Assembly (NCBI GenBank): GCA_002269645.1
Contig: NIVC01000516.1
Span: 62,001 to 126,000 of the forward strand
Source: Macrostomum lignano
Taxonomy: Eukaryota
Reading direction: 5' to 3'
Length of the DNA: 64,000 nucleotides
Shown: piece by piece, positions 1 through 63,172 of the stretch
Numbering within the stretch: position 1 is the first letter of the stretch
Layout of the letters: every line of letters starts with the position of its first letter
The notes under the pieces: generated by a model
Seen by the model: only the letters and a program-made list of their open reading frames with translations
Databases searched by the model: none
Told to the model about the DNA's origin: nothing
Translations under genes and position numbers: made by a program

Positions 1-4264
<4,264 letters not shown>

Positions 4265-6476: not shown

Positions 6477-7957
<1,481 letters not shown>

Positions 7958-8072
7958 TAATCGTCAGCTGCGATGCTAATGCCCACAACACTGCCTGGTC
8001 TAGTAGCGATACTAACAGGCGCGGTGACTTACTTATTGATTTCATTAACTCCTCCTCGTTACACATTTGTAA

Positions 8073-9637
<1,565 letters not shown>

Positions 9638-9676
9638 TGAGTCGCAGCCGCGTGTACTCTGGCCGGAGACCTCAAG

Positions 9677-9816
9677 TGACGTCAGTTCTAAAAATAGAAC
9701 GAATCACGAGGTCTTGCGCGCACTGAGACCCTGCCTCGAGATCTCAAGTGACGTCAGTTCTAAAAATAGAACAAGTCACGAGGTCTTGTGCGTGGGTGTT
9801 TCCCGGCTATAAATAG
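9677..9816. promoter_or_regulatory. LTR promoter module: two copies of (CRE TGACGTCA + MEF2-type CTAAAAATAG) upstream of a TATA/MEF2-type CTATAAATAG
   Basis: TGACGTCA at 9677-9684 and 9749-9756; CTAAAAATAG at 9688-9697 and 9760-9769; CTATAAATAG at 9807-9816. Function is inferred. Confidence 0.55.
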
Positions 9817-10243
9817 GACCCCTCTCCCCTTGTTTCCGTCAAGGATTTGGCTTCTTATCTGCGGAGAATTCACTAAGATCCCGTGTGCGTCAGTGTCTAA
9901 CTAAGTGCCCTTTGAGTACTGAATCCGTTTGTACTGGTCTGACTGAGACCCCACTAAAGCCCAAGCCTAAGGGAGGCTAACACTGCCTTCCCAGCCACCC
10001 CTGAGCCCGGCGGGGATCTGCTGATCAGGACGCCTTGTTCATTAACCTGCAAATCTGCACGCTGTGCTGAGTTCGTTGACTTGTTTATTTCGTTCCGACG
10101 GGAAGCTCACCTCATCGAAGGCCGAGACCTGAAGGAACTGGTGGCAGCACTACCTACGCTACTAAGAGTTAAGAAGGCTTCTGAGTGAGAGGACGGAGCC
10201 CAAGTCACTGCGCTGTACAGCAGGACAACCACAGGTACAACAC

Positions 10244-10326
10244 TGGTGGCAGCGGTGGGATTCAAAGATCTACCAGGCCACCCCGAGAAAACCCAAACTA
10301 TTTCACTGGTGGCAGCGGTGGGATTC
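10244..10326 (+). other. Two tRNA-Leu primer-binding-site sequences TGGTGGCAGCGGTGGGATTC (10244-10263, 10307-10326)
   Basis: Reverse complement of the 3' end of eukaryotic tRNA-Leu(AAG/UAG type) including CCA (..GAATCCCACCGCTGCCACCA). Each copy is preceded by CA plus one base. Confidence 0.8.
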
Positions 10327-11725
10327 AAAGACCTACCAGGCCACCCCGAGAAAACCCCCATTCTATAACACATCCTTAGCAAACAACTCGCCTGCGGGAT
10401 GTTTGTTGACTTCGAAGGAGCGTTTGACAATGTCCTTTTCCGCTCCTTCAGAAACTCTCTTTCCCGCAGGAATGTGAGACACAGCATTGTCCGCTGGATT
10501 TATTTTATGATCCGCAATAGGTTTGCGACATCTACGCTTATGGGCGTTACCTACACCCGGGCGGTGATGAAAGGCGGCCCGCAAGGTGGCGTGCTAACTC
10601 CACTTCTTTGGAATCTCGTCATGGACGAACTTCTAACCGCTGACATTCCCAGCAGTATCACCTGGACGGGCTACGCCGATGACGTTGCCGCGGTCGTCAG
10701 CGGACCCGACCCCGCCACTCTGCGCAACCTGATGCAGCAATTCGCCGACAAGGCGGCCGACTGGGCTACGCAGCATGGCCTAAATATCAGCGTCACCAAG
10801 ACTGTCGCTGTCGTTTTCACCAAGCGCCGTGCGTGGGAGATGAAAAACCTCACTGTCTATGGCAGAAACATCCCCTTCAAGAAGGAGGTCAAATACCTCG
10901 GTGTGACGCTAACGCATGACCTGCGCTGGACGAAGCACCTTGATAACGTCATCGGTCGGGCAAAACGCTGCTTTGCCCAGCTTCGCAGAGCCATCGGGCC
11001 GACTTGGGGCCTCTCACCTAGAACGGTCCGTTGGATTTACACCGGCATCATCCGGCCCAGTATCACGTACGCGAGTCTCATCTGGACTAGCGTGCTGGAG
11101 CAGAAGACCGCCCGTCAGCGCCTGTACCAGCTTCAGGGCAGCATTTGCCGTGCCATCACAGGTGCGTACCCGTCTACCCCCTACGAGGGGCTGAACACTA
11201 TCCTTAACCTGCCTCCGCTTCACCTATTCATTAGGGCGGAGGCTATGAAGTCTGCCTCCCGGCTTATCAGAGATAAAACGTTAAATAACGCACCCTCTGG
11301 CTCTATGCCAATGAAAACATTAATCCCGCATATGGACTTTGTCCGCCGCGACCTCAACAACATCCACATGGACCTGGGCAATGTGGATAGTCGACCTCCC
11401 GCCCTCAACATCAGGAGGGGCTTCAAGACCGCCATCCCTGGCCGAGACAATATTCTGCTGGATGTCGGTGTGAACCGGCGCAGCCAGGGCATTCACTGCT
11501 TCACCGACGGCTCGCTGTTCAAAGGCCGCACTGGAGCGGGTATTGCCATTTTCCACGAGGGTAAGATGCTTTTCCAGGAAAGTCTGCACCTCGGTGAGAA
11601 CACCTCAGTTTTCCAAGCTGAAATCTGCGCCATTGAGCAGTGTGCCCAGCAACTGCTTCAGGCGAACATAAATAACTTTGACATTAATTTCTACACTGAT
11701 AGCCATGCTGCTATTAAGGCCTTAA

Positions 11726-12452
<727 letters not shown>

Positions 12453-12456
12453 TAAG

Positions 12457-12730
12457 TTCCCTCTGTGTTCTACTCCCCTCTGTGTTCTACTTCTCTCTGT
12501 TCTACTCCTCTCTGTGTTCTACTTCCCTCTCTGTTCTACTCCTCTGTGTTCTACTCCCCTCTGTGTTCTACTCCTCTCTGCTCTACTCCCATCTGTGTTC
12601 CATTCGTTCTCTTTACTCCCCACTGTGTTCTACTTTTCTCTGTGTTCTAATCCCCTCCGTGTAATACTTCCTTCTCTGTTCTAACCCCTTCGGTTCTAAC
12701 CCTTTCCCTGCTCTATTCCTCTCTGTTTTA
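12457..12730. repeat. Degenerate CT-rich minisatellite (~17-19 bp, CTACTYCYCTCTGTGTT)
   Basis: Array follows the LINE A tail; one unit lies on the 5' side of the LINE. Confidence 0.85.
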
Positions 12731-14468: not shown

Positions 14469-15126
14469 GTGTGCTGGCGCGTGTTCCACCCTATCGCCTG
14501 CATTGGAGTTCAGTATTTGTAATCAGCAAGGATCACCGCGGTGCAACCAAACACGGTCCAGTGCTATTAGTATCCACAGTACTGGCCGTTGGCCTGAAAA
14601 TTTAACGAACGACATTGAAATTTTTAATATGTACATCAGGGCTGCATTTTTAATAAATGCATGGGATTTAACTATATTCACAAATTAACCGGGACTCTAA
14701 CTATTCGATATAGTGTCCAATCCAAGAAATTCTAAAACAGTAATCCAATATCCAACAATAATTATTATTTGCTAATAAAATTTTTGCGCTGCATCCTAAT
14801 TGCAGCATTTAATTTCACCCTGGATATGTTAAAACCTACTAACAAAGTCAATTGCAGACGGCTCAAATTGTGTCTACTAATTTTTCCAAATTTGTGGCTA
14901 TATGACTTATGGAAATGAATACTTACTGCATCGAATCTTTTTACGAAGAATACATGTATTGTGTAAGCGAACCGGAATGGGAAATTACTTGGCATGTAAC
15001 TAGTGTTATGTAAGACGGTCTCTGACTGTTTTTATCCCGGCTGCCTTTTGGCGGCATTTCTCGGGTTGTGCGCAATCCAATTGACCTGCCCTTCGGGTAG
15101 CTCAATATCTAAGTGTCCTCACCGGA

Positions 15127-15331
15127 GCATGCAAGGCGGGTTCAGCACGCCTGTGTAGCATGAGACAGACTAGGCCTACAAGCTAAGGTCTGCGATCCTA
15201 CACACCTGCACCCCCTCTATTCTGGTGCAGGAATGGCAGGAGAACTCTCTCCAAGCTGACTCGCAAGCCGACCCAGGGGTTCACACCCCGCATGTGTTCA
15301 AGGCAGCTCTAGGGCTGCTGGACTGACTGGG
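15127..15331 (+). ncRNA. Putative HDV-like self-cleaving ribozyme at the LINE B 5' end
   Basis: Nested double pseudoknot by eye: P1 15127-32/15290-95, P2 15272-76/15327-31, P3 15277-79/15287-89, L3 TTCACAC, P4 15297-15322, J4/2 CTGA with candidate catalytic C15323. Confidence 0.65.
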
Positions 15332-15728
15332 CTCCGGCGGCGGCAACCCATCCGTGGCCTTTTGGCCAAGTTGGGTACGGGCTCCGCCCGGAAGTGAACC
15401 TGTGCGTATCAGGTACCTCTGGCCACGGCTCTGAGGAACAGGTACCACCCTCTGACCTTAACGGGGTATGCGGCTAGTCCACAGGCTCCGGAGGCAGTCC
15501 TCCTGCTTCCCTCAAGGGCCCAGTGTAGTACCGTGCTGATGGTCCTTTGGTTCGGCCTCTGGTTTTTCCAAGCCGGGCTCTTAGCCGGGGAGTTTCTCGG
15601 TTGCTAGCGGTCGGGCCGGTACGGGCTTAAGTCACCCCCCGGTCGCTAACTCTTGGCCTGGTTGTTGGGTTTGGGGTTACGGCCCAGCAGCTTCTCACCT
15701 CTAGTCCCCATTCGCCTTTCAGCGACTC

Positions 15729-19723
<3,995 letters not shown>

Positions 19724-22700
19724 CTGCCCGTGGTCGCCAGGGGTTAGCGAAATGGGCGGCAACGCCTCCTCGCTGTTTCCGGACGCACGGAGCCCCCTGC
19801 AGCTAAGTCAAGTAAGTCAAGTAAGTCCTCACTGGAGGTGATGTACACATCCAAAAAAAGATCCTCTATTTTTCTATTATTTCGGCCCTGCCAATTGGTT
19901 TAGGGGGGGGTGTACCTGGAGTGATTATGACTCTGGACTGCAGTGCGGCTAGATCGGGACTGCAGGAAAGACGACCATTCACAAAAATGTACGGTAGAGC
20001 CCAGTTGAATGCCAGCCCTGAGGCTGAGCCCCAGAATAAGGGTTCAGGTGCTCCTCTCTATTGTTTTTATTCCTTTGTGCTTTTATAAGCTTTGTGTTTT
20101 ATCCCTGGCAATTCAGCCGCCCAATCTTTAAAGTTATGAGCTCTGCCCTTCTGGTCCATCTTGCTCTCCCTTGGTCCATCAGTTGCTGGCTCCTCTGGTC
20201 TCCCTGCTTATTATGTCTTGGCTCTCATCTCTGACAGTGGATTGGTGTCCTGGGGTTGATGTTCGTCCCGAATCGGGGAATACCGGCTGAGTCCGGTGTC
20301 CCTTGCTCCATGGTGCCCCTTCTCCCACCCCTTGGCTTGGGCTTATTTGAGCTGGGTATAGTGAAAAAGCCTTGGCTTGCAGCCCTATAGGGGGAGCTTC
20401 TCGTACCTTGCCGCCTCCTGATAGGAGACTCGCCCTTGGAAAATAAGCTGTCCAGACTCGTTCCAATCTTAAAGCTATATTTCCGTAGACTTCGAGTTTC
20501 TCGCTCTCGGACCGCTTTCCAAAAAAAACTCAAAAAGTTTTTCGTTTCCAATCTTTTTGCACGCGCGCACTCGGGACTTGTCGTTGGGGCGAGGCTTGGG
20601 TGGACCATCTTTGCACCCGTCCCCCTGATTCCACTATGGGTTGGCGGTGTCTTTGTCCATGGACTTGGGGTTGTAGCGCACAATAAGGTTATTCAGCGGA
20701 GCCATGGAGTCCTAGCCCCAATCTGGGTCTCTCGGGCTTTATGCCCCTGGCAGTATAGCCCCCAATATATCCAGCGGCAGAGCCCTTCCCTAAGCTGATC
20801 TGCGGGTTGCCCACGCTTCCCACCCCGTAACAACAACAAACTAGTGTAGTGTGAAAATAATCGGTCAAATTAACTGATTCACAGGATTGGCATTGCACGC
20901 TCCTATTAGCTTTAGAACAGCAACATATATAACGGGCAGTGACGGGGCAGACAACCGGCCCGAAACTAAAACCGATCGCATGTTATTCTACATACGAATT
21001 CGTACGTTTGGGCCTGCAGCGCGTTGCTGCGCGTAACAAAATAATAAAAGCATCAACATCAGTAACCAGTCGTGAGCGAATGGCGCAGAAGGTTCCACCA
21101 TTACTCTTTTAGGCAAGATATAAAATTATATGATGACCAACGTGAGCTTTTTTCTATACATGGATTTCACGTTTTATATGTACTCGTACTACTACATGTA
21201 CTAAAATAATCTTAAATAACCGAATGCAATGCATTAAAGAAAATTTCCCTAATTATGACTCTTTCGAAATATTATACTAAGAGTTGTGCTTGAAAATGTT
21301 TGAGTTGCTATATCCTTAGAAGTAGAACTAGTCCACGAAGTGTTATTTCACCTCATTTCATAGAAAGAATTCACGAACAAGAAATTTCGACTCCGTTAGC
21401 AAACACGAGGTCTTGAAAGTGTTGTTGTTGTGCTTGAGTACTACTTTTGTTGCTTGTATTGTAGGTAGGGTCTATGCATAGCATTGTCGTGCTCTTTATT
21501 CATTGAATCAGAATATATTAGGTTATTTAACGCAAATATAAAATACTACAAAAGAATTTTCAAAGTCAAACGAATGATAAAAAATGGGTGATCTTTTACT
21601 TTCGCACAATCGCTCGTTCAATTATTTTCTTAGGCCTAGTAATTTGCTGTTCATTTAAATGTGCGCAGTATGGCGTAGATTGAAAGATTTGTTTGTAAAT
21701 TGATTCATAACTATAAACATGTTTTATTAGGGCCTATGGTATATAGCTATTTAAATAGTAGGCAATACATTTTAGGCATTATTTTTTATACTTAATGACT
21801 AATTGTTACAGGTGTGATTCTTCCTTCTTAATAATATCCCACTGCTGTTACCAAAGTTGTTACAGGCCTTTTGACTCCCTATGAGGATTCCACCGTTATG
21901 CCACCAAAAGTTGTCCTAGGGCTCTGTCTCTCTATAAAAAATCCCACCGCTAAGTCACCAAAGTTGTTACAGGGGTATTTCTTTTTACTGTTCTTACTGT
22001 TTACTTACTGGTAGCGCATGTACTTTTTACTGGTAGCATCTATACTTCTATTGTACTTTCGGGCCTGAGCGGTCTTTTTAAGCACTGTCTATCCTATTCC
22101 TATACTCTAAAGATTCAGTCCTAGGCGTTCCCGGGATCAGAGGGTCACAGTGCACTTCGCTGGGTATTCTGCCCTGAGGCAGGTTTCTCAGACTCTAAGC
22201 CTGGATTTCTCTACCCTGTGGTAGGATTTCTGCCTTTCTAAAGGCGGGTTACTAGACTTCTAAGTCTAGGATTTCTCGTTCTCTGAGAACGGACTAAGTT
22301 TCTCCCAATTTGGGGATCCTAATGCTGCTAAATAACTAAGTCAATAAGTATTAATCAAGCTTCAATTTTAGGATACTAGAACAGTTTTAAGCTTTGAAGC
22401 CATGCAACGAGGCAAGTCGGAGTTGCTCTCCTTCAGTTTTAGCTCGTGTATTTATACTCCTCTCTTAGTTCATTTTACTTTATTCATAACTTTATTCATA
22501 ACTTTAACCTTATCTCACTTTCCAGATCTCAAAAAGTCTAGATTTATGACTATCTAACTTTTGGTAACTAACAATATTACTTATTTATATTTGATATATA
22601 TCAAGTTATTAACAACCTCAATATTATATAATAATTGTTTTTTTCCTATTATCATCATTGTATATATTTAACAAAGAACAATAATGTTGATAGATATCAT

Positions 22701-29519: not shown

Positions 29520-36256
<6,737 letters not shown>

Positions 36257-41900: not shown

Positions 41901-44900
41901 CCGAGTGTTCAAACAAGAGTCCACTACCGAGTGTTCAACGGAGCTCAGAGTCCCCTACCGAGTGTTCAAACAAGAGTCCACTACCGAGTGTTCAACGGAG
42001 CTCAGAGTCCACTACCGAGTGTTCAACGGAGCTCAGAGTCCACTACCGAGTGTTCAACGGAGCTCAGAGTCCCCTACCGAGTGTTCAAACAAGAGTTCAC
42101 TACCGAGTGTTCAACGGAGCTCAGAGTCCACTACCGAGTGTTCAACGGAGCTCAGAGTCCCCTACCGAGTGTTCAACGGAGCTCAGAGTCCCCTACCGAA
42201 TGTTCAACGGAGCTCAGAGTCCCCTACCGAGTGTTCAACAATGCTCAGAGTCCCCTACCGAGTGTTCAACAATGCTCAGAGTCCCCTACCGAGTGTTCAA
42301 ACAAGAGTCCACTACCGAGTGTTCAACGGAGCTCAGAGTCCCCTACCGAGTGTTCAACAATGCTCAGAGTCCCCTACTGAGTGTTCAACAATGCTCAGAG
42401 TCCCCTACCGAGTGTTCAACAATGCTCAGAGTCCCCTACCGAGTGTTCAACAATGCTCAGAGTCCCCTACCGAGTGTTCAAACAAGAGTCCACTACCGAG
42501 TGTTCAACGGAGCTCAGAGTCCCCTACCGAGTGTTCAACAATGCTCAGAGTCCCCTACTGAGTGTTCAACAATGCTCAGAGTCCCCTACCGAGTGTTCAA
42601 ACAAGAGTTCACTACCGAGTGTTCAAACAAGAGTTCACTACCGAGTGTTCAAACAAGAGTTCACTACCGAGTGTTCAACGGAGCTCAGAGTCCCCTACCG
42701 AGTGTTCAACAATGCTCAGAGTCCCCTACCGAGTGTTCAAACAAGAGTTCACTACCGAGTGTTCAACGGAGCTCAGAGTCCCCTACCGAATGTTCAACGG
42801 AGCTCAGAGTCCCCTACCGAGTGTTCAAACAAGAGTCCCCTACCGAGTGTTCAACCGAGCTCAGAGTCCCCTACCGAGTGTTCAACCGAGCTCAAAGTCC
42901 CCTACCTTTGGGCAGTGCTCCTAAAGTAGTGGTGTTTATGTCCAAAATTTTCATGATTTTGCTATGGGTGCGTGATTCATAGTTGTTAATTAATTAATAC
43001 ATAATATATATCGTAGTATATTAGTGCGAAAAAACTATTTTGCAGTGAAAGTGTTACTTTATACTTATATAAACATAAATAATTGCTCAAATGAGAACAG
43101 ACCCAAGGGTGCTTTTCTCTCAAGAGTCTCTTGTCTTATGCGTACCCCAGCAACAAGGAAAACAGCTGGGGGGGGGGACAGTTCAGTGTCTCGCTCCCAG
43201 CTTATCGGATATTTACATGATCTCGGCAAAGACCCTGGGAAATGCTAATTTTTCTGTTAGAAAGTCAGGCTTGCAGTGATCGACTGACTCGAAAGGAAAT
43301 TGTCGTCAATCGAGGAGAGTGCGAATCGAGCTCTCCTCTCACTCCAGTAAACTATTTACTAATTTTAACTGTTTCATGAACTGAACGAGTAGCGCGTTGA
43401 AATCATTAATTTAATTTGAAGCTCCACTGTCGCTCGTATTGATTACTGAACTACAGTAGTACAAGTATTACTTTTCAGAATTATTCCTTACTTGGGACGC
43501 TTCTTTGGGGACTTAGGGGCTTTAGCACCAAGGGGCTTTAGCACCAAGGGGCTTTAGCACCAAGGGGCTTTAGCACCAAGGGGCTTTAGCACCAAGGGGC
43601 TTTAGCACCAAGGGGCTTTAGCACCAAGGGGCTTTAGCACCAAGGGGCTTTAGCACCAAGGGGCTTTAGCACCAAGGGGCTTTAGCACCAAGGGGCTTTA
43701 GCACCAAGGGGCTTTAGCACCAAGGGGCTTTAGCACCAAGGGGCTTTAGCACCAAGGGGCTTTAGCACCAAGGGGCGCCAGCACCAAGGGGCGCCAGCAC
43801 CAAGGGGCTTTAGCACCAAGGGGCTTTAGCACCAAGGGGCTTTAGCACCAAGGGGCTTTAGCACCAAGGGGCGCCAGCACCAAGGGGCTTTAGCACCAAG
43901 GGGCTTTAGCACCAAGGGGCTTTAGCACCAAGGGGCTTTAGCACCAAGGGGCTTTAGCACCAAGGGGCTTTAGCACCAAGGGGCTTTAGCACCAAGGGGC
44001 TTTAGCACCAAGGGGCTTTAGCACCAAGGGGCTTTAGCACCAAGGGGCTTTAGCACCAAGGGGCTTTAGCACCAAGGGGCTTTAGCACCAAGGGGCTTTA
44101 GCACCAAGGGGCTTTAGCACCAAGGGGCTTTAGCACCAAGGGGCTTTAGCACCAAGGGGCTTTAGCACCAAGGGGCTTTAGCACCAAGGGGCTTTAGCAC
44201 CAAGGGGCTTTAGCACCAAGGGGCTTTAGCACCAAGGGGCTTTAGCACCAAGGGGCTTTAGCACCAAGGGGCTTTAGCACCAAGGGGCTTTAGCACCAAG
44301 GGGCTTTAGCACCAAGGGGCTTTAGCACCAAGGGGCTTTAGCACCAAGGGGCTTTAGCACCAAGGGGCTTTAGCACCAAGGGGCTTTAGCACCAAGGGGC
44401 TTTAGCACCAAGGGGCTTTAGCACCAAGGGGCTTTAGCACCAAGGGGCTTTAGCACCAAGGGGCTTTAGCACCAAGGGGCTTTAGCACCAAGGGGCTTTA
44501 GCACCAAGGGGCTTTAGCACCAAGGGGCTTTAGCACCAAGGGGCTTTAGCACCAAGGGGCTTTAGCACCAAGGGGCTTTAGCACCAAGGGGCTTTAGCAC
44601 CAAGGGGCGCCAGCACCAAGGGGCTTTAGCACCAAGGGGCTTTAGCACCAAGGGGCGCCAGCACCAAGGGGCGCCAGCACCAAGGGGCGCCAGCACCAAG
44701 GGGCGCCAGCACCAAGGGGCGCCAGCACCAAGGGGCGCCAGCACCAAGGGGCGCCAGCACCAAGGGGCGCCAGCACCAAGGGGCGCCAGCACCAAGGGGC
44801 GCCAGCACCAAGGGGCGCCAGCACCAAGGGGCGCCAGCACCAAGGGGCGCCAGCACCAAGGGGCGCCAGCACCAAGGGGCGCCAGCACCAAGGGGCGCCA

Positions 44901-47900
44901 GCACCAAGGGGCGCCAGCACCAAGGGGCGCCAGCACCAAGGGGCGCCAACACCAAGGGGCGCCAGCACCAAGGGGCGCCAGCACCAAGGGGCGCCAGCAC
45001 CAAGGGGCGCCAGCACCAAGGGGCGCCAGCACCAAGGGGCGCCAGCACCAAGGGGCGCCAGCACCAAGGGGCGCCAGCACCAAGGGGCGCCAGCACCAAG
45101 GGGCGCCAGCACCAAGGGGCGCCAGCACCAAGGGGCGCCAGCACCAAGGGGCGCCATTTCAGCTGCATTTTAACATCATACTAGCACTCGGGGATTACAG
45201 CAAAAGTAGCTGTCCGTCCCGACCCATTTCTGATCAAGGGATCAAATCTAGCAAACTACTGCATTCATTGTTCAATACAATATATTGATGCACTGTATAG
45301 TGCAAAGATTGATGGCTTCCATTTACATTGGAACCGCGGCCGACTCCCGTTGCTACGGAAATGCTTTTTTCCGTCTCGCATTCCCTTTTGTTTTAGTTGG
45401 TCGTATATTTTTTCACTAGTATTGGCAAATACTAGCCTACATCCATAATACTATGTATGACTGCATTGAACTGGCAGTCAGTTGTCCCTTTTAGCTCCTT
45501 AATGTCCGTCAGTCAGCTGACTGCAAGTGCTGACAGGTGATATCAATAGACTGACAGGCCGGCAATGCTTTGAATGCTTAGTAGTCTCGTTTAGTTCTGC
45601 GAATTAGTGTTGTATCTGGATTTTACTATAATTACTACAATGGAGTATCATTGTCTTTGAGTTTAGATCCTCAAATTTAAACATCCTCAAAGTTAAAGAT
45701 CATCAAAGTTAAATATCCTCAAAGTTAAACATCCTCAATGGTAAGCATCCTCAAAGTTTAACATACTCAAAGTTAAACATCCTCAAAGTAGAAAATCCTC
45801 AAAGTTAAACATCCTCAATGTTGAACATCTTCAAGGTTAAACATCCTCAAAGTTAAAAATCCTAAAAGTTAAACATCCTCAATGTTAAACATTATCAAAG
45901 TTTAACATCCTCAAAGTTAAACATCCTCAAAGTTAAACATCCTTAAAGTTAAACATCCTCAAAGTTAAACATCCTCAAAGTTAAACATCCTCAAAGTTAA
46001 ACATCCTCAAAGTTAAACATCCTCAAAGTTAAACATCCTCAAAGTTAAACATCCTTAAAGTTAAACATCCTCAAAGTTAAACATCCTCAAAGTTAAACAT
46101 CCTCAAACTCAATGTTAAACATCCTCAAAGTTAAATATCCTCAAAGTTGAACATCCTCAAAGTTTAACATCCTCATAATTAAACATCACCAAAGTTTATA
46201 TCCTCAAATTTAAAAATCATCACAGTTTGACACCCCAAAGGTTACTCACCCGACAAGTACTGTATGTCGCAATTGGATGTATTCCAGCTAGTAAGCACAA
46301 ACTGCGGCAGGTGAAAGTCTTTGTTCACTTCAAACGGTTTAGATTTGCGCCATTGAAGAATCAGCTCCTGTTTTGTGAACCGATCTATAAACACAGGAAA
46401 GTCTGCCAAATGAAAACAGTAACAAATTATTTTACTAAAACAGCAGTTAGAACTCACAGCTTTCCATGTTGATCTCGCAGACCTGCGTGTCCAATGGGAA
46501 TCGGTAGAGGGCCATGTGGCAGCCAAGCCTGAGGCTGATTCTGCAAAGACGTGGCGTTTGGGCAGTGACTAAGTAACTAGCAAGGTAGATATTCATATTA
46601 TTATTCTACTGTAGTTACCATAATTACCACACAATGCAGTAAAACTCCATGTAAATAATGTACGTGACTGTGTTTGCCATGTTATATAAAACAAGGACAC
46701 CCTCATGCAACGCTTTTGACCACATCGTTTCAACACAATTCTGCCCATTCCGCTCACTCCTCAGCACTACAAGCGCGCCAATACTGTACGCAGGCACGAA
46801 CTCATACACACGCTCACGTAGGGTGTACAGAGGCCCTGACTTTCTAATTGGCAGGCATGTACACTATCTGTGCCTTGGGGGTTGGCCCTCATGGCTGTGA
46901 ACCGCACGACAGCCCCCCCCCCAGCCAATTCTCGTGCACACCAACCCCAGAATCGCACAGAATCGAATCAGGGGTCATGGCTCTGCCGTCCAGGAAACCA
47001 CTAAGCTGATGGAACGTTTAAACTGTAACAGCTTGAGTCTGCTCGTAGAATTGACGCCCTTGAGGCCCAACCCCCAAGGCACAGTGAAGTGTACATGCCC
47101 AACGATAAATAAATTTAGGGCCGCTGTACACTGCTTTGTGAGTGTGTGCCCGTGCGTATGACTGCGTACGTATCCGCGCGCTTGTGTGCCTGCTCAGGGG
47201 AGTGGGCGGAATGGGTAGTAATGCCCATTTGTGTTGACAATGTCGCTTAAAGTGCGCCAGGGTGCACACATCCACCTGCCTCTAATTAAAATCATTATAT
47301 TACTAATTTAGGTTATTTAAAATCCTTAAAACATCGCCAATAAACAGTCAAATGGTTAAAACTGCAGGCATCACGCGGGAACCTACCTGGTAGAGTAGTA
47401 AACATCACCGTTCGGTTTGACTCTGAGCAGCTTGTTCGGTATCGTAATGTCGTGATATTTAGCCTGCTTCTCGTTCACAAAGATTATATCTGGCAGCCAG
47501 ATTTCGTCGATAAGACGCGGATCAATGGTCAGACCGATGGATTCGTTGACCGTTGGTTGTTGTTGTTGTTGGTGTTCCTGCTGCTTTTGCTTCTGACCTC
47601 TGCAGCCGCCTCCGCTGCCGATGGCACTGGCGTTGAACGCTAAACGACTGTCGTGCCAAGACAGCCGGAGAAAGATCTGAATGCTGTAGTCCTGGATGCA
47701 TCGATCGGCAGGGGTTGGAGATTAAGAATTTGGTGTCAATTTATTTCACTTAGAATGATTTTTCCCGCGGTCCAGAGAGTTATCTGGAGAATAATTGCAC
47801 TTGGGAGAATAACTTTATTGGATCCCGTGACCTGCACCTGAACTTGGCGTACTAATGCTAACTATTTGTTATTTTATGGTTCAAAAGAATAAATTCAATG

Positions 47901-53323: not shown

Positions 53324-53854
53324 GATGTAACTGACTTTCCATGAAACGAAGTGCGTCCTTCTATTTCCAGTGCTCATTGCTTCCACAAGTAAAAATACGA
53401 AATGAAAATAACAATCAATGTTTCACATATTTAGAATTAAGATGGAAATTTTCATTCCGTTGAGAGAGCGGTTGCGTGACAGGCAGCCAGACAGGCTGGC
53501 AGGCGGGGCTTTCTTTTATATTGCCGAGAAACAGCGCCAGTGTTCAGGAAATCAGCGCCGACCGTTGGACTCCGCTGGCTGAATGGCAGCTGGCACGCGG
53601 GACTCCGGCATTCCAGCCGCAGCCCTTATCCCTCTCTGTCATGACTAACTCTCGTTGACCGACTGAGTCTCCATCGGAATCGCCTTCCTGAGGACATTCA
53701 CTTTTTTAAATATATTGCTCCTTCAATCGCGTCCTAAACAATTTTATTGATTTTTGATTCTTCTTTATGTTCACGTGTCTGTGTCTCAACTACACTTCAA
53801 AGCATCACGCATTCTCTCTACGGTACTCCCCTGTCTCCCTTCTCTACCCGAGAT

Positions 53855-56800
53855 CTCTCCTCTCACCCACCATCTTTCCCCTCATCCCACCATCTCTCCC
53901 CTCATCCCACCATCTCTCCCCTCATCCCACTATCTCTCCCCTCATCCCACGATCTCTCCCCTCATCCCACCATCTCTCCCCTCATCCCACTATCTCTCCC
54001 CCTCACCCCACTATCTCTCCCCTCATCCCACCATCTCTCCCCTCATCCCACTATCTCTCCCCTCATCCCACGATCTCTCCCCTCATCCCACGATCTCTCC
54101 CCTCATCCCACTATCTCTCCCCTCATCCCACGATCTCTCCCCTCATCCCACCATCTCTCCCCCTCACCCCACGATCTCTCCCCTCATCCCACCATCTCTC
54201 CCCTCATCCCACTATCTCTCCCATCATCCCACTATCTCTCCCCTCATCCCACGATCTCTCCCCTCATCCCACCATCTCTCCCCTCACCCAACGATCTCTC
54301 CCCCTCACCCCACGATCTCTCCCCCTCATCCCACGATCTCTCCCCCTCATCCCACGATCTCTCCCCTCATCCCACCATCTCTCCCCTCACCCCACGATCT
54401 CTCCCCTCATCCCACCATCTCTCCCCTCATCCCAGTATCTCTCCCCTCATCCCACCATCTCTCCCCTCATCCCACCATCTCTCCCCCTCACCCACCATCT
54501 CTCCCCTCATCCCAGTATCTCTCCCCTCATCCCACCATCTCTCCCCCTCATCCCACCATCTCTCCCCCTCACCCCACGATCTCTCCCCTCATCCCACGAT
54601 CTCTCCCCCTCACCCACCATCTCTCCCCTCACCCACGATCTCTCCCCTCACCCCACGATCTCTCCCCTCATCCCACGATCTCTCCCCTCACCCCACGATC
54701 TCTCCCCTCATCCCACGATCTCTCCCCTCATCCCACGATCTCTCCCCTCATCCCACCATCTCTCCCCCTCACCCCACGATCTCTCCCCCTCACCCCACGA
54801 TCTCTCCCCCTCATCCCACGATCTCTCCCCCTCACCCCACGATCTCTCCCCCTCATCCCACGATCTCTCCCCTCATCCCACCGTCTCTCCCCCTCACCCC
54901 ACGATCTCTCCCCTCATACCACCATCTCTCCCCTCATCCCACCATCTCTCCCCTCATCCCACTATCTCTCCCCCTCACCCCACTATCTCTCCCCTCACCC
55001 CACTATCTCTCCCCTCACCCACCATCTCTCCCCTCATCCCAGTATCTCTCCCCTCATCCCACCATCTCTCCCCTCATCCCACCATCTCTCCCCCTCACCC
55101 CACGATCTCTCCCCTCATCCCACGATCTCTCCCCCTCACCCCACGATCTCTCCCCCTCATCCCACGATCTCTCCCCTTCATCCCACGATCTCTCCCCTCA
55201 TCCCACCATCTCTCCCCCTCACCCCACGATCTCTCCCCTCATCCCACCATCTCTCCCCTCATCCCACCATCTCTCCCCTCATCTCACTATGTCTCCCCCT
55301 CACCCCACTATCTCTCCCCTCACCCACCATCTCTCCCCTCATCCCAGTATCTCTCCCCTCATCCCACCATCTCTCCCCTCATCCCACTATCTCTCCCCTC
55401 ACCCACCATCTCTCCCCTCATCCCAGTATCTCTCCCCTCATCCCACCATCTCTCCCCTCATCCCACGATCTCTCCCCTCATCCCACCATCTCTCCCCTCA
55501 TCCCACGATCTCTCCCCCTCACCCCACGATCTCTCCCCCTCACCCCACGATCTCTCCCCCTCATCCCACGATCTCTCCCCTCATCCCACCGTCTCTCCCC
55601 CTCACCCCACGATCTCTCCCCTCATACCACCATCTCTCCCCTCATCCCACCATCTCTCCCCTCATCCCACTATCTCTCCCCTCACCCCACTATCTCTCCC
55701 CTCACCCCACTATCTCTCCCCTCACCCCACTATCTCTCCCCTCACCCACCATCTCTCCCCTCATCCCAGTATCTCTCCCCTCATCCCACCATCTCTCCCC
55801 CTCACCCCACGATCTCTCCCCTCATCCCACGATCTCTCCCCCTCACCCCACGATCTCTCCCCCTCATCCCACGATCTCTCCCCCTCATCCCACGATCTCT
55901 CCCCTCATCCCACCATCTCTCCCCCTCACCCCACGATCTCTCCCCTCATCCCACCATCTCTCCCCTCATCCCACCATCTCTCCCCTCATCTCACTATCTC
56001 TCCCCCTCACCCCACTATCTCTCCCCTCACCCACCATCTCTCCCCTCATCCCAGTATCTCTCCCCTCATCCCACCATCTCTCCCTCATCCCACCATCTCT
56101 CCCCCTCACCCACCATCTCTCCCCTCATCCCAGTATCTCTCCCCTCATCCCACCATCTCTCCCCCTCATCCCACCATCTCTCCCCTCACCCCACGATCTC
56201 TCCCCTCATCCCACGATCTCTCCCCCTCACCCACCATCTCTCCCCTCACCCCACGATCTCTCCCTCTCACCCCACTATCTCTCCCCTCACCCACCATCTC
56301 TCCCCTCATCCCAGTATCTCTCCCCTCATCCCACCATCTCTCCCCTCATCCCACCATCTCTCCCCCTCACCCACCATCTCTCCCCTCATCCCAGTATCTC
56401 TCCCCTCATCCCACCATCTCTCCCCCTCATCCCACCATCTCTCCCCCTCACCCCACGATCTCTCCCCTCATCCCACGATCTCTCCCCCTCACCCACCATC
56501 TCTCCCCTCACCCTACGATCTCTCCCCTCACCCCACGATCTCTCCCCTCATCCCACGATCTCTCCCCTCATCCCACCGTCTCTCCCCCTCACCCCACGAT
56601 CTCTCCCCTCATACCACCATCTCTCCTCTCATCCCACCATCTCTCCCCTCATCCCACGATCTCTCCCCTCATCCCACGATCTCTCCCCTCATCCCACGAT
56701 CTCTCCCCTCATCCCACCATCTCTCCCCTCATCCCACGATCTCTCCCCCTCACCCCACGATCTCTCCCCCTCATCCCACGATCTCTCCCCCTCACCCCAC

Positions 56801-57225
56801 GATCTCTCCCCCTCATCCCACGATCTCTCCCCTCATCCCACCGTCTCTCCCCCTCACCCCACGATCTCTCCCCTCATACCACCATCTCTCCCCTCATCCC
56901 ACCATCTCTCCCCTCATCCCACTATCTCTCCCCCTCACCCCACTATCTCTCCCCTCACCCCACTATCTCTCCCCTCACCCACCATCTCTCCCCTCATCCC
57001 AGTATCTCTCCCCTCATCCCACCATCTCTCCCCTCATCCCACCATCTCTCCCCTCATCCCACCATCTCTCCCCCTCACCCCACGATCTCTCCCCTCATCC
57101 CACGATCTCTCCCCTCATCCCACCATCTCTCCCCCTCACCCCACCATCTCTCCCCTCACCCCACCATCTCTCCCCCTCACCCACCATCTCTCCCCTCACC
57201 CCACTATCTCTCCTCTCACCCTCTG
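53855..57225. repeat. 3.4-kb pyrimidine-rich minisatellite (~21-23 bp, ATCTCTCCCCTCATCCCACS)
   Basis: About 150 variable units. Confidence 0.97.
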
Positions 57226-60923: not shown

Positions 60924-63172
60924 GCTGGCGCCCCTTGGTGCTGGCGCCCCTTGGTGCTGGCGCCCCTTGGTGCTGGCGCCCCTTGGTGCTGGCGCCCCTT
61001 GGTGCTGGCGCCCCTTGGTGCTGGCGCCCCTTGGTGCTGGCGCCCCTTGGTGCTGGCGCCCCTTGGTGCTGGCGCCCCTTGGTGCTGGCGCCCCTTGGTG
61101 CTGGCGCCCCTTGGTGCTGGCGCCCCTTGGTGCTGGCGCCCCTTGGTGCTGGCGCCCCTTGGTGCTAAAGCCCCTTGGTGCTAAAGCCCCTTGGTGCTGG
61201 CGCCCCTTGGTGCTGGCGCCCCTTGGTGCTGGCGCCCCTTGGTGCTGGCGCCCCTTGGTGCTGGCGCCCCTTGGTGCTGGCGCCCCTTGGTGCTGGCGCC
61301 CCTTGGTGCTGGCGCCCCTTGGTGCTGGCGCCCCTTGGTGCTGGCGCCCCTTGGTGCTAAAGCCCCTTGGTGCTGGCGCCCCTTGGTGCTGGCGCCCCTT
61401 GGTGCTGGCGCCCCTTGGTGCTGGCGCCCCTTGGTGCTGGCGCCCCTTGGTGCTGGCGCCCCTTGGTGCTGGCGCCCCTTGGTGCTGGCGCCCCTTGGTG
61501 CTGGCGCCCCTTGGTGCTGGCGCCCCTTGGTGCTGGCGCCCCTTGATGCTAAAGCCCCTTGGTGCTGGCGCCCCTTGGTGCTGGCGCCCCTTGGTGCTGG
61601 CGCCCCTTGGTGCTGGCGCCCCTTGGTGCTGGCGCCCCTTGGTGCTGGCGCCCCTTGGTGCTGGCGCCCCTTGGTGCTGGCGCCCCTTGGTGCTGGCGCC
61701 CCTTGGTGCTGGCGCCCCTTGGTGCTGGCGCCCCTTGGTGCTAAAGCCCCTTGGTGCTAAAGCCCCTTGGTGCTAAAGCCCCTTGGTGCTAAAGCCCCTT
61801 GGTGCTGGCGCCCCTTGGTGCTAAAGCCCCTTGGTGCTGGCGCCCCTTGGTGCTGGCGCCCCTTGGTGCTGGCGCCCCTTGGTGCTGGCGCCCCTTGGTG
61901 CTGGCGCCCCTTGGTGCTGGCGCCCCTTGGTGCTAAAGCCCCTTGGTGCTAAAGCCCCTTGGTGCTAAAGCCCCTTGGTGCTAAAGCCCCTTGGTGCTAA
62001 AGCCCCTTGGTGCTGGCGCCCCTTGGTGCTGGCGCCCCTTGGTGCTGGCGCCCCTTGGTGCTGGCGCCCCTTGGTGCTGGCGCCCCTTGGTGCTGGCGCC
62101 CCTTGGTGCTGGCGCCCCTTGGTGCTGGCGCCCCTTGGTGCTGGCGCCCCTTGGTGCTGGCGCCCCTTGGTGCTGGCGCCCCTTGGTGCTGGCGCCCCTT
62201 GGTGCTGGCGCCCCTTGGTGCTGGCGCCCCTTGGTGCTGGCGCCCCTTGGTGCTGGCGCCCCTTGGTGCTAAAGCCCCTTGGTGCTGGCGCCCCTTGGTG
62301 CTAAAGCCCCTTGGTGCTGGCGCCCCTTGGTGCTAAAGCCCCTTGGTGCTAAAGCCCCTTGGTGCTGGCGCCCCTTGGTGCTAAAGCCCCTTGGTGCTAA
62401 AGCCCCTTGGTGCTAAAGCCCCTTGGTGCTAAAGCCCCTTGGTGCTAAAGCCCCTTGGTGCTAAAGCCCCTTGGTGCTAAAGCCCCTTGGTGCTAAAGCC
62501 CCTTGGTGCTAAAGCCCCTTGGTGCTGGCGCCCCTTGGTGCTGGCGCCCCTTGGTGCTAAAGCCCCTTGGTGCTAAAGCCCCTTGGTGCTAAAGCCCCTT
62601 GGTGCTAAAGCCCCTTGGTGCTAAAGCCCCTTGGTGCTAAAGCCCCTTGGTGCTAAAGCCCCTTGGTGCTAAAGCCCCTTGGTGCTAAAGCCCCTTGGTG
62701 CTAAAGCCCCTTGGTGCTAAAGCCCCTTGGTGCTAAAGCCCCTTGGTGCTAAAGCCCCTTGGTGCTAAAGCCCCTTGGTGCTAAAGCCCCTTGGTGCTAA
62801 AGCCCCTTGGTGCTAAAGCCCCTTGGTGCTAAAGCCCCTTGGTGCTAAAGCCCCTTGGTGCTAAAGCCCCTTGGTGCTAAAGCCCCTTGGTGCTAAAGCC
62901 CCTTGGTGCTAAAGCCCCTTGGTGCTAAAGCCCCTTGGTGCTAAAGCCCCTTGGTGCTAAAGCCCCTTGGTGCTAAAGCCCCTTGGTGCTAAAGCCCCTT
63001 GGTGCTAAAGCCCCTTGGTGCTAAAGCCCCTTGGTGCTAAAGCCCCTTGGTGCTAAAGCCCCTTGGTGCTAAAGCCCCTTGGTGCTAAAGCCCCTTGGTG
63101 CTAAAGCCCCTTGGTGCTAAAGCCCCTTGGTGCTAAAGCCCCTTGGTGCTAAAGCCCCTTGGTGCTGGCGCC
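60924..63172 (+). repeat. 16-bp satellite array 2, same family as 43515-45156 in opposite orientation
   Basis: About 140 units; GGCG-variant block followed by TAAAG-variant block. Confidence 0.98.

What the first reader, a model, noticed from the sequence alone, without database searches (positions are those of the whole stretch)
15115..15335. HDV-like self-cleaving ribozyme whose predicted cut site coincides with the TSD-defined 5' end of LINE B
Seen: P1 GCATGC (15127-32) pairs with GCATGT (15290-95), opening with a G-U wobble. P2 is CCCAG/CTGGG, P3 is GGG/CCC, and L3 is TTCACAC followed after P1' by GT, as in the CPEB3 ribozyme (UUCACGU, GU). P4 is TTCA..GCAGCT-CTAG-GGCTGC..TGGA, and J4/2 is C-T-G-A. 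A ~140-nt J1/2 contains its own hairpins (AGGCG/CGCCT, CAGAC/GTCTG, CCTGCACC/GGTGCAGG). The left TSD copy ends at 15126/15127, so the element begins at ribozyme G1, although the two were identified independently. Known: HDV-like ribozymes process 5' ends of R2, RTE, SART, Baggins (LOA) and L1Tc elements, and R2 versions have long J1/2 inserts. Caveats: P1 is 6 bp rather than 7, L3 has A at the G25-equivalent position (could be CpG decay), and J4/2 has G at the A77-equivalent position. Inference: a probably unannotated ribozyme in a non-insect LOA-like lineage that frees the element from host or LTR read-through transcripts.
Basis: partly seen in the sequence, partly recalled or inferred. Interest (0 to 1): 0.85.

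Follow-up and report, generated by a model that had tools for sequence, protein, structure and literature searches.

The report
HDV-like ribozyme relic at LINE start
The first 205 bases of a dead flatworm LINE retrotransposon fold on paper into a hepatitis-delta-virus-like self-cleaving ribozyme whose cut site falls at the element's first base; this is a known way for such elements to trim their own RNA, seen here in a new host and lineage, but this copy carries a probably inactivating mutation and nothing has been tested at the bench.

Summary
Window 15127-15331 can form the nested double pseudoknot of HDV-like ribozymes. It meets every sequence constraint of the published Luptak-lab search descriptor except one: L3 is TTCACAC, with A where the conserved G should be. 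Two size limits are also exceeded. J1/2 is 139 nt and P2 is 5 bp, both still within the range reported for R2 ribozymes.

A descriptor relaxed just enough to admit the candidate finds only this site in the window. In 40,000 composition-matched shuffles of the element's 5' end it never places a cut site at nt 1-2.

The predicted cut site, G15127, is the first base after an 11/12-nt target-site duplication, with 1 nt of ambiguity.

The element is a dead APE-RT-RNase H LINE whose family occurs in the flatworm Macrostomum lignano.

I could obtain no second copy of the 5' end, so there is no conservation or covariation evidence. Rfam models do not match. Nine loci from eight distant relatives show no such motif.

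Most likely this is a decayed copy of a genuine 5'-processing ribozyme: a new member of a known kind. The LOA assignment is unverified.

The parts
15116..15126 (+). Left copy of the target-site duplication, TCCTCACCGGA. G15127 could also belong to it.
   Evidence: It matches 19826-19836 (TCCTCACTGGA) at 10/11 positions, or 11/12 if the following G is counted. The one difference is a C/T at a CpG.
15127..15132 (+). P1 5' strand, GCATGC. The predicted cleavage is 5' of G15127, which is also the first base of the LINE.
   Evidence: It pairs 6/6 with 15290-95, and G15127.T15295 is the wobble. It fits the descriptor term GNNNNN*:NNNNNY.
15133..15271 (+). J1/2, 139 nt. A closed multibranch domain at 15136-15264 leaves linkers of 3 nt and 7 nt.
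   Evidence: Its minimum free energy is -55.4 kcal/mol, z = -3.0 against 200 shuffles. The same domain appears in the fold of the whole 209 nt. Peripheral J1/2 domains are known to activate large HDV-like ribozymes (PMC4908430).
15272..15276 (+). P2 5' strand, CCCAG.
   Evidence: It forms 5 Watson-Crick pairs with 15327-31, duplex energy -6.7 kcal/mol. The next position is an A.C mismatch.
15277..15279 (+). P3 5' strand, GGG.
   Evidence: It pairs with CCC 15287-89. The same P3 occurs in the published ribozyme Spur_13.
15280..15286 (+). L3, TTCACAC. A15285 sits where the conserved G belongs.
   Evidence: It matches the descriptor TYYHCG*Y at 6 of 7 positions. The sea-urchin family has TTCACGT. 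C15284-A15285 is what a CpG becomes after CpG->CpA decay, and the 5'UTR has CpG o/e 0.58 and CpA o/e 1.25.
15287..15289 (+). P3 3' strand, CCC.
15290..15295 (+). P1 3' strand, GCATGT.
15296..15297 (+). J1/4, GT. G15296 could pair with C15282 to form a one-pair P1.1.
   Evidence: It fits the descriptor term RN. Sea-urchin family 1 has the same GT. The P1.1 pairing is inferred.
15298..15322 (+). P4 hairpin: an outer 3-4 bp, an AG bulge, GCAGCT/GGCTGC and loop CTAG.
   Evidence: Fold energy is -11.5 kcal/mol, z = -2.0. The pairs are listed.
15323..15326 (+). J4/2, CTGA. C15323 is in the position of the catalytic cytosine.
   Evidence: It fits the descriptor term CNRA. The confirmed ribozyme Spur_13 has an identical CTGA.
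15327..15331 (+). P2 3' strand, CTGGG.
   Evidence: A second family copy, the M. lignano gene model P0123, has the same amino acids (AAGLTGL) across 15308-15334.
15332..15728 (+). Remainder of the 5'UTR.
   Evidence: It contains no long ORF. It is 95% identical at the amino-acid level to exons of M. lignano gene models P0123 and P0124.
15729..19803 (+). Decayed LINE coding region.
- ORF1 N-terminus, 15729-~16010.
- Internal deletion of about 364 aa of ORF1, junction ~16015-16075.
- APE, ~16030-16845.
- RT, 17446-18336.
- RNase H, ~18810-19190.
- CCHC motif, ~19469-19522.
- Several frameshifts.
   Evidence: Pfam hits Exo_endo_phos_2 (6.8e-20), RVT_1 (2.1e-32) and RNase_H (1.7e-8). ORF list. tblastn of P0123.
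19804..19826 (+). 3' tail: (TAAGTCAAG) twice, then TAAGT.
   Evidence: The left flank carries TAAGTG at 15110-15, a possible microhomology for priming.
19826..19836 (+). Right copy of the target-site duplication, TCCTCACTGGA, followed by G19837.

Best explanation
Window 15127-15331 is the 5'-terminal HDV-like self-cleaving ribozyme of a Macrostomum LINE family, preserved here in a dead copy.

Proposed mechanism in an active master copy (inferred):
- The element is transcribed as part of a longer RNA, or from its own promoter with upstream read-through.
- The 5' region folds into the double pseudoknot P1/P1.1/P4 stacked beside P2/P3. The 129-nt structured J1/2 domain holds P1 and P2 together.
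- C15323 in J4/2, with a Mg2+ bound by L3, catalyses cleavage immediately 5' of G15127.
- The released RNA begins exactly at the element's first base with a 5'-OH. Full-length reverse transcription then yields insertions that start at G15127, as this one does.

Status of each step:
- Shown: the sequence fits the architecture, the fit is non-random, and it coincides with the insertion boundary.
- Inferred: catalysis, the role in 5' processing, and that A15285 in L3 is a CpG->CpA mutation of an ancestral G that has weakened or killed this copy.
For: - All helices and joining regions are present as described.
- The sequence constraints of the published RNArobo descriptor are met for P1 (G...Y), P3, J1/4 (RN), J4/2 (CNRA) and 6 of 7 L3 positions.
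- The relaxed descriptor's only hit in 128 kb of window is this core. Shuffles gave 0.03 complete motifs per 128 kb. None of 40,000 local shuffles had a cut site at nt 1-2.
- In about 250 kb of other real DNA the descriptor found one core and no complete motif.
- The scanner recovers five published ribozymes.
- The minimum-energy fold of 15127-15335 independently forms P1, the closed J1/2 domain, a register-shifted P3, and P4. The ribozyme-compatible nested fold (-74.3) plus P2 (-6.7) is about equal to the MFE of -82.4 kcal/mol.
- The TSD places the element's 5' end at G15127, give or take 1 nt.
- Published precedent covers cleavage at the 5' end of R4, Dong, Baggins, L1Tc and RTE elements, P1 of 6-7 bp, P2 of at least 5 bp, and P1-P1' distances of 23 to more than 700 nt (PMC3774820).
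Against: - L3 has A at the highly conserved G. The same G->A change abolished cleavage in a Nasonia R2 ribozyme (PMC3774820).
- P2 is 5 bp and J1/2 is 139 nt, both outside the published descriptor (6-7 bp, <=50 nt).
- P1.1 would be a single pair.
- An alternative 5-bp hairpin, GGGGU/ACCCC, competes with P2 and L3.
- No Rfam family matched, even at E<=10 on 75-nt or 501-nt stretches.
- No second copy of the 5' end could be examined, so there is no conservation or covariation evidence.
- Nine loci from eight distant relatives (32-43% identity) show no motif. LINE A in the same window has only a ~60-nt 5'UTR and no motif.
- The TSD boundary is ambiguous by 1 nt.
Confidence: 0.65

Rival explanations
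1. The 5'UTR is a structured RNA domain with another role, such as an internal promoter region read as DNA, or a site for translation initiation or element-protein binding. The 5' end at G15127 would then be set by transcription initiation, and the HDV-like pairing scheme would be incidental or non-catalytic.
For: - The J1/2 region and P4 are stable ordinary hairpins that need no ribozyme to explain them.
- Many LINEs of the I/jockey type use internal promoters (established knowledge).
- In L1Tc the same first 77 nt act as both promoter and ribozyme (PMC3383444 abstract). Structure at a LINE 5' end therefore need not mean cleavage alone.
- This copy lacks the conserved L3 G.
Against: This reading does not explain why the published sequence constraints (TYYHC.Y, RN, CNRA, the G.U at +1) and the P1/P2/P3 pseudoknot pairings are satisfied together exactly at nt 1. 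That happened in none of 40,000 local shuffles.
Confidence: 0.18
2. The match is a chance resemblance. A GC-rich, helix-prone 5'UTR happens to satisfy a permissive motif, and the reader chose it after the fact.
For: - HDV-like ribozymes have only five or six conserved nucleotides (PMC4870747).
- A very loose descriptor hits about once per kb.
- Three relaxations of the published descriptor were needed.
- There is no comparative support and no Rfam hit.
Against: - With those relaxations included in the null model, 7 of 40,000 local shuffles gave any complete motif, and none gave one at nt 1-2.
- The expectation is 0.03 per 128 kb.
- There were no complete motifs in about 250 kb of other real DNA.
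Confidence: 0.12
3. This copy is itself an active ribozyme that tolerates A at the L3 position, that is, a natural variant rather than a mutated relic.
For: The corresponding substitution does not completely eliminate cleavage in HDV itself (PMC3774820). [quoted passage not shown]
Against: The element is otherwise dead, with an ORF1 deletion and frameshifts. The position is a CpG->CpA site in a CpG-depleted UTR. The same change killed the Nasonia R2 ribozyme.
Confidence: 0.1

Closest known systems
HDV-like ribozymes at the 5' ends of non-LTR retrotransposons (R2, R4/Dong, RTE, Baggins, L1Tc)
   Same: - It lies at the extreme 5' end of an autonomous LINE.
- The predicted cleavage is at the element's first nucleotide, as reported for R4, Dong, Baggins, L1Tc, RTE and Drosophila R2 (PMC3774820).
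- P1 is 6 bp and P2 is 5 bp, and the long J1/2 is within the R2 range of 23 to more than 700 nt between P1 and P1'.
   Different: - The host is a free-living flatworm (Macrostomum). The literature held here reports nothing on ribozymes in Macrostomum.
- The element is an APE-RT-RNase H LINE with an ORF1 and a (TAAGTCAAG)n tail, and is not rDNA-specific.
- L3 has A instead of the conserved G.
- Activity is untested.
Sea-urchin drz-Spur HDV-like ribozymes (PMC4870747 supplement, Fig. S15)
   Same: - Family 1 has L3 TTCACGT and J1/4 GT, against TTCACAC and GT here.
- Spur_13 has P3 GGG/CCC and J4/2 CTGA, identical to the candidate.
- The order of elements is the same.
   Different: - drz-Spur ribozymes are compact (about 70-83 nt, J1/2 1-2 nt, P2 7-8 bp, P1 6-7 bp).
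- The candidate has a 139-nt J1/2 and a 5-bp P2.
- There is no sequence similarity outside the core positions.
CPEB3 ribozyme (mammalian intronic HDV-like ribozyme)
   Same: From my own recollection, not tested here: L3 UUCACGU, J1/4 GU and a weak P1.1 resemble the candidate's L3 and J1/4.
   Different: The Rfam search of the window, whose library I recall (not checked here) includes the CPEB3_ribozyme and HDV_ribozyme models, returned no match at E<=10. CPEB3 is a compact single-copy intronic element, not a transposon 5' end.
Large HDV-like ribozymes with structured J1/2 peripheral domains (Webb et al. 2016)
   Same: A stable closed domain in J1/2 could 'pinch' P1 and P2 together (PMC4908430). 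Here the domain spans 15136-15264, z = -3.0.
   Different: The activating role of this particular domain is only inferred.

Membership tests
HDV-like self-cleaving ribozymes | Nested double-pseudoknot order: P1-J1/2-P2-P3-L3-P3'-P1'-J1/4-P4-J4/2-P2' | tested here: met
   All strands are in the right order and complementary.
HDV-like self-cleaving ribozymes | Cleavage-site G at +1 pairing with a pyrimidine (G.U) at the base of a 6-7 bp P1 | tested here: met
   G15127.T15295 plus 5 Watson-Crick pairs. The descriptor term is GNNNNN*:NNNNNY.
HDV-like self-cleaving ribozymes | P3 of 3 strict Watson-Crick pairs closing L3 of consensus TYYHCG*Y, including the conserved G | tested here: not met
   P3 GGG/CCC is met. 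L3 TTCACAC matches 6 of 7 positions, with A15285 replacing the conserved G. The published descriptor with unchanged L3 finds nothing in the window. This copy therefore cannot be filed as a canonical member. That the ancestor had G, lost by CpG->CpA decay, is an inference.
HDV-like self-cleaving ribozymes | J1/4 = RN, able to form P1.1 with L3 | tested here: inconclusive
   GT fits RN. Only one Watson-Crick pair (C15282-G15296) can form, beside a U.U.
HDV-like self-cleaving ribozymes | J4/2 = CNRA with the catalytic C | tested here: met
   CTGA 15323-26. The confirmed ribozyme Spur_13 has the same CTGA.
HDV-like self-cleaving ribozymes | P2 of 6-7 bp and J1/2 <=50 nt (search descriptor); P2 >=5 bp and long J1/2 allowed (R2 ribozymes) | tested here: inconclusive
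   P2 is 5 bp and J1/2 is 139 nt. Both are outside the descriptor and inside the R2 range.
HDV-like self-cleaving ribozymes | Mg2+-dependent site-specific self-cleavage | not testable with these tools
   This needs in vitro transcription and a cleavage assay.
HDV-like self-cleaving ribozymes | Conservation and compensatory changes of P1-P4 among related copies | not testable with these tools
   - No other copy of the 5' end is in the reachable collections.
- The one partial copy is seen only as protein, with the same amino acids over 15308-15334.
- Nine loci from eight distant relatives show no motif.
Rfam families (library searched as a whole; from memory it includes HDV_ribozyme, CPEB3_ribozyme and drz-Agam models, not checked here) | A match to the family covariance model | tested here: not met
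   No match at gathering score on the window, nor at E<=10 on 15000-15500 or 15262-15336.
   The domain order APE-RT-RNase H-CCHC is shown, and the family has an ORF1. I had no LOA, I, R1 or Tad reference sequences. The nearest named database hits are only generic 'jockey-like' insect annotations at about 40% identity.

The most novel reading that the evidence does not exclude
The family consensus, not just this copy, carries A at the L3 position normally occupied by the conserved G, yet still cleaves efficiently because the large J1/2 domain compensates. That would be a natural, active HDV-like variant in a flatworm LINE family, lacking the G.U reverse wobble thought to hold the catalytic metal.
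Probability: 0.07. Interest if true: 0.6.

Novelty: new member of a known kind. Interest (0 to 1): 0.4.

Why it matters
If confirmed, it would extend HDV-like 5' processing to an RNase H-bearing LINE family of a free-living flatworm. Macrostomum lignano is a regeneration and stem-cell model with a very repeat-rich genome.

It would also add a large-J1/2 example outside R2, and it would give annotators a precise marker for full-length copies of this family.

It does not change the picture of how such ribozymes work. HDV-like ribozymes at LINE 5' ends are well established.

Tried and rejected
- **Rfam cmscan.** Run on the whole window at gathering score, then at E<=10 on 501 nt and on 75 nt. No hits.
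- **Other copies in the window.** None found by a 32-mer with 3 mismatches or by blastn.
- **Metagenome contigs.** An exact degenerate 25-mer of the core found nothing. A protein-guided scan gave only two distant loci, L003 and L004, without the motif.
- **Closest relative, L001** (JGI, 77% nt identity). Its contig starts about 90 nt before the APE gene, so it holds no 5'UTR.
- **Genome contigs and viral contigs protein scans.** Nothing found.
- **A looser core pattern in viral contigs.** It gave 19 chance hits, none a complete motif.
- **Six-frame 5'UTR translation used as a protein query.** It identified the host through M. lignano gene models, but their DNA is not on record.
- **Exhaustive representative search with the ORF spanning the core.** Only a spurious repeat protein came back.
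- **Seven RT relatives on long contigs.** No motif.
- **A very loose descriptor.** Discarded, because it hits about once per kb.
- **A custom covariance model from the published sea-urchin ribozymes.** Abandoned, because MAFFT misaligned the variable P4/P2' half and gapped input is not accepted.
- **Papers.** Webb 2009, Ruminski 2011 and the Webb & Luptak 2011 review are not held in the library.

Full report
**What is there.**
- P1: GCATGC 15127-32 pairs with GCATGT 15290-95, 6 bp, opening with G15127.T15295.
- P2: CCCAG 15272-76 pairs with CTGGG 15327-31.
- P3: GGG 15277-79 pairs with CCC 15287-89, enclosing L3 TTCACAC.
- J1/4 is GT.
- P4 is a 4 bp + bulge + 6 bp hairpin with loop CTAG, 15297-15322.
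- J4/2 is CTGA.

The pair lists and energies are: P1 -6.6, P2 -6.7 and P3 -2.5 kcal/mol as duplexes. Ordinary minimum-energy folding of 15127-15335 knows nothing of pseudoknots. It nevertheless produces P1, a closed multibranch J1/2 domain, P4, and a register-shifted P3. The J1/2 segment alone folds with z = -3.0. The ribozyme-compatible nested fold plus P2 comes to about -81 kcal/mol, against an MFE of -82.4.

**The element.** Downstream lie an APE endonuclease (Pfam 6.8e-20), a reverse transcriptase (2.1e-32) and an RNase H (1.7e-8), followed by a CCHC motif. They are spread over several frames. The element ends in (TAAGTCAAG)2TAAGT at 19804-26.

It is flanked by TCCTCACCGGA (15116-26) and TCCTCACTGGA (19826-36). 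A G follows both copies, so the element begins at G15127 or C15128.

I used a six-frame translation of the 5'UTR as a protein query. It hit UniRef gene models of the flatworm Macrostomum lignano at 92-95% identity. tblastn of one of them, P0123, follows the window copy from 15308 to 19743. It also shows that about 364 residues of an ORF1 are deleted here. The window therefore most likely comes from M. lignano or a close relative, and this copy is dead.

**Is it more than chance?** The Luptak laboratory's RNArobo descriptor for HDV-like ribozymes is printed in the supplement of PMC4870747:

| Element | Descriptor |
|---|---|
| P1 | GNNNNN*:NNNNNY |
| J1/2 | <=50 nt |
| P2 | 6-7 bp |
| P3 | 3 strict pairs |
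| L3 | TYYHCG*Y |
| J1/4 | RN |
| P4 | stem |
| J4/2 | CNRA* |

The candidate satisfies every sequence term except the G in L3. It is outside the size terms for J1/2 (139 nt) and P2 (5 bp). For R2 ribozymes, the Eickbush laboratory reports P1 of 6-7 bp, P2 of at least 5 bp, and P1-P1' distances from 23 to more than 700 nt (PMC3774820).

I coded the descriptor with just those three relaxations.
- It recovers five published sea-urchin ribozymes at their first nucleotide.
- In the window, on both strands, its only hit is this core. The same core also pairs with a chance second P1 at 14992, in the flank.
- 300 dinucleotide shuffles of the window gave 0.13 cores and 0.03 complete motifs per 128 kb.
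- 40,000 shuffles of the element's own first 600 nt gave 31 cores, 7 complete motifs, and none with P1 starting at nt 1 or 2.

CNRA allows it, and the confirmed ribozyme Spur_13 has the same CTGA and the same GGG/CCC P3.

**What argues against.**
- The conserved L3 G is A here. The same G->A substitution abolished cleavage of a Nasonia R2 ribozyme, although it does not completely abolish it in HDV (PMC3774820).
- The site is C15284-A15285, which is what a CpG becomes after decay. The 5'UTR is CpG-poor and CpA-rich (o/e 0.58 and 1.25), and the TSD itself shows a CpG->TpG change. A mutated relic is therefore plausible but unproven.
- Rfam models do not match at any threshold tried.
- I could not obtain a second copy of the ribozyme region. 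The closest DNA relative, L001 at 77% identity, starts inside the coding region. The metagenome, genome and viral collections gave nothing useful. The M. lignano gene models are not on record as DNA. The exhaustive protein search returned only a spurious repeat protein.
- The only family-level information is that P0123 keeps the same amino acids across 15308-15334, which covers the 3' half of P4, J4/2 and P2'.
- Nine loci from eight distant relatives (32-43% identity), and LINE A in the same window, show no such motif. The feature is not demonstrably clade-wide.

**Conclusion.** The most likely reading (about 0.65) is that this is a decayed copy of a real 5'-terminal HDV-like ribozyme. In active family members it would cut the transcript immediately 5' of G15127 and so define the RNA and insertion 5' end, as described for R4, Dong, Baggins, L1Tc, RTE and Drosophila R2 (PMC3774820). 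This copy is probably inactive or weak.

The rivals are as follows:
- A non-catalytic structured or promoter 5'UTR, about 0.18.
- Chance, about 0.12.
- This copy is itself active despite the A in L3, about 0.1; that is a sub-case of the ribozyme reading rather than a competitor.

The clade label 'LOA-like' is untested. The literature held here reports nothing on ribozymes in Macrostomum. I therefore rate it a new member of a known kind, of moderate interest.

Noticed in passing
window 15308-19743, and the window as a whole: UniRef gene models of Macrostomum lignano (A0A1I8I4W7, listed here as P0123, and P0124) are chimeric predictions. They translate this LINE family, including its 5'UTR, at 90-97% identity, fused to host genes (ribosomal protein L19; a lipoamide acyltransferase). 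This identifies the probable host, and it shows that these gene models are contaminated by a transposon.
   Followed up: partly
window ~16015-16075: The LINE B copy lacks about 364 residues of ORF1 that are present in the family (P0123 residues 280-643). It also has several frameshifts, so it is a non-autonomous, dead copy.
   Followed up: yes
window 6563-12455 (+): A second, different LINE ('LINE A') is present.
- ORF1 is at 6625-7463 and ORF2 is 30-45% identical to the LINE B family.
- The RT is interrupted at about 9241-10504.
- It has a (TAAG)n tail and a 13-nt TSD, TTCCCTCTGTGTT (6549-61 / 12457-69).
- Its 5'UTR is only about 60 nt, with no HDV-like motif.
- It sits at the edge of a 17-nt minisatellite (12459-12683).
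   Followed up: partly
window 15110-15115 versus 19804-19826: The target DNA just upstream of the TSD reads TAAGTG, the same as the element's 3' tail unit TAAGT. This suggests that microhomology between the RNA tail and the nicked target primed reverse transcription.
   Followed up: no
window 1-64000, for example 2388-3453, 31122-32358, 43515-45152, 53853-57218 and 60924-63172: The window has an exceptional density of long micro- and minisatellite arrays (55 TRF rows). Examples are (GATA)266, a 20-mer repeated 166 times with GC skew about -0.9, and a 16-mer repeated 140 times.
   Followed up: no
window 14992-14997: A second GCATGT lies 135 nt upstream of the element, in the flank. It can also pair with P1' (with two G.U pairs). 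I judged it a chance alternative P1 outside the element.
   Followed up: partly
window 15366-15375: An alternative J4/2-P2' (CCAA + G + TTGGG) also satisfies the descriptor, with a much longer P4 region. It is weaker than the 15323-31 solution because it includes one G.U pair and an extra base.
   Followed up: no
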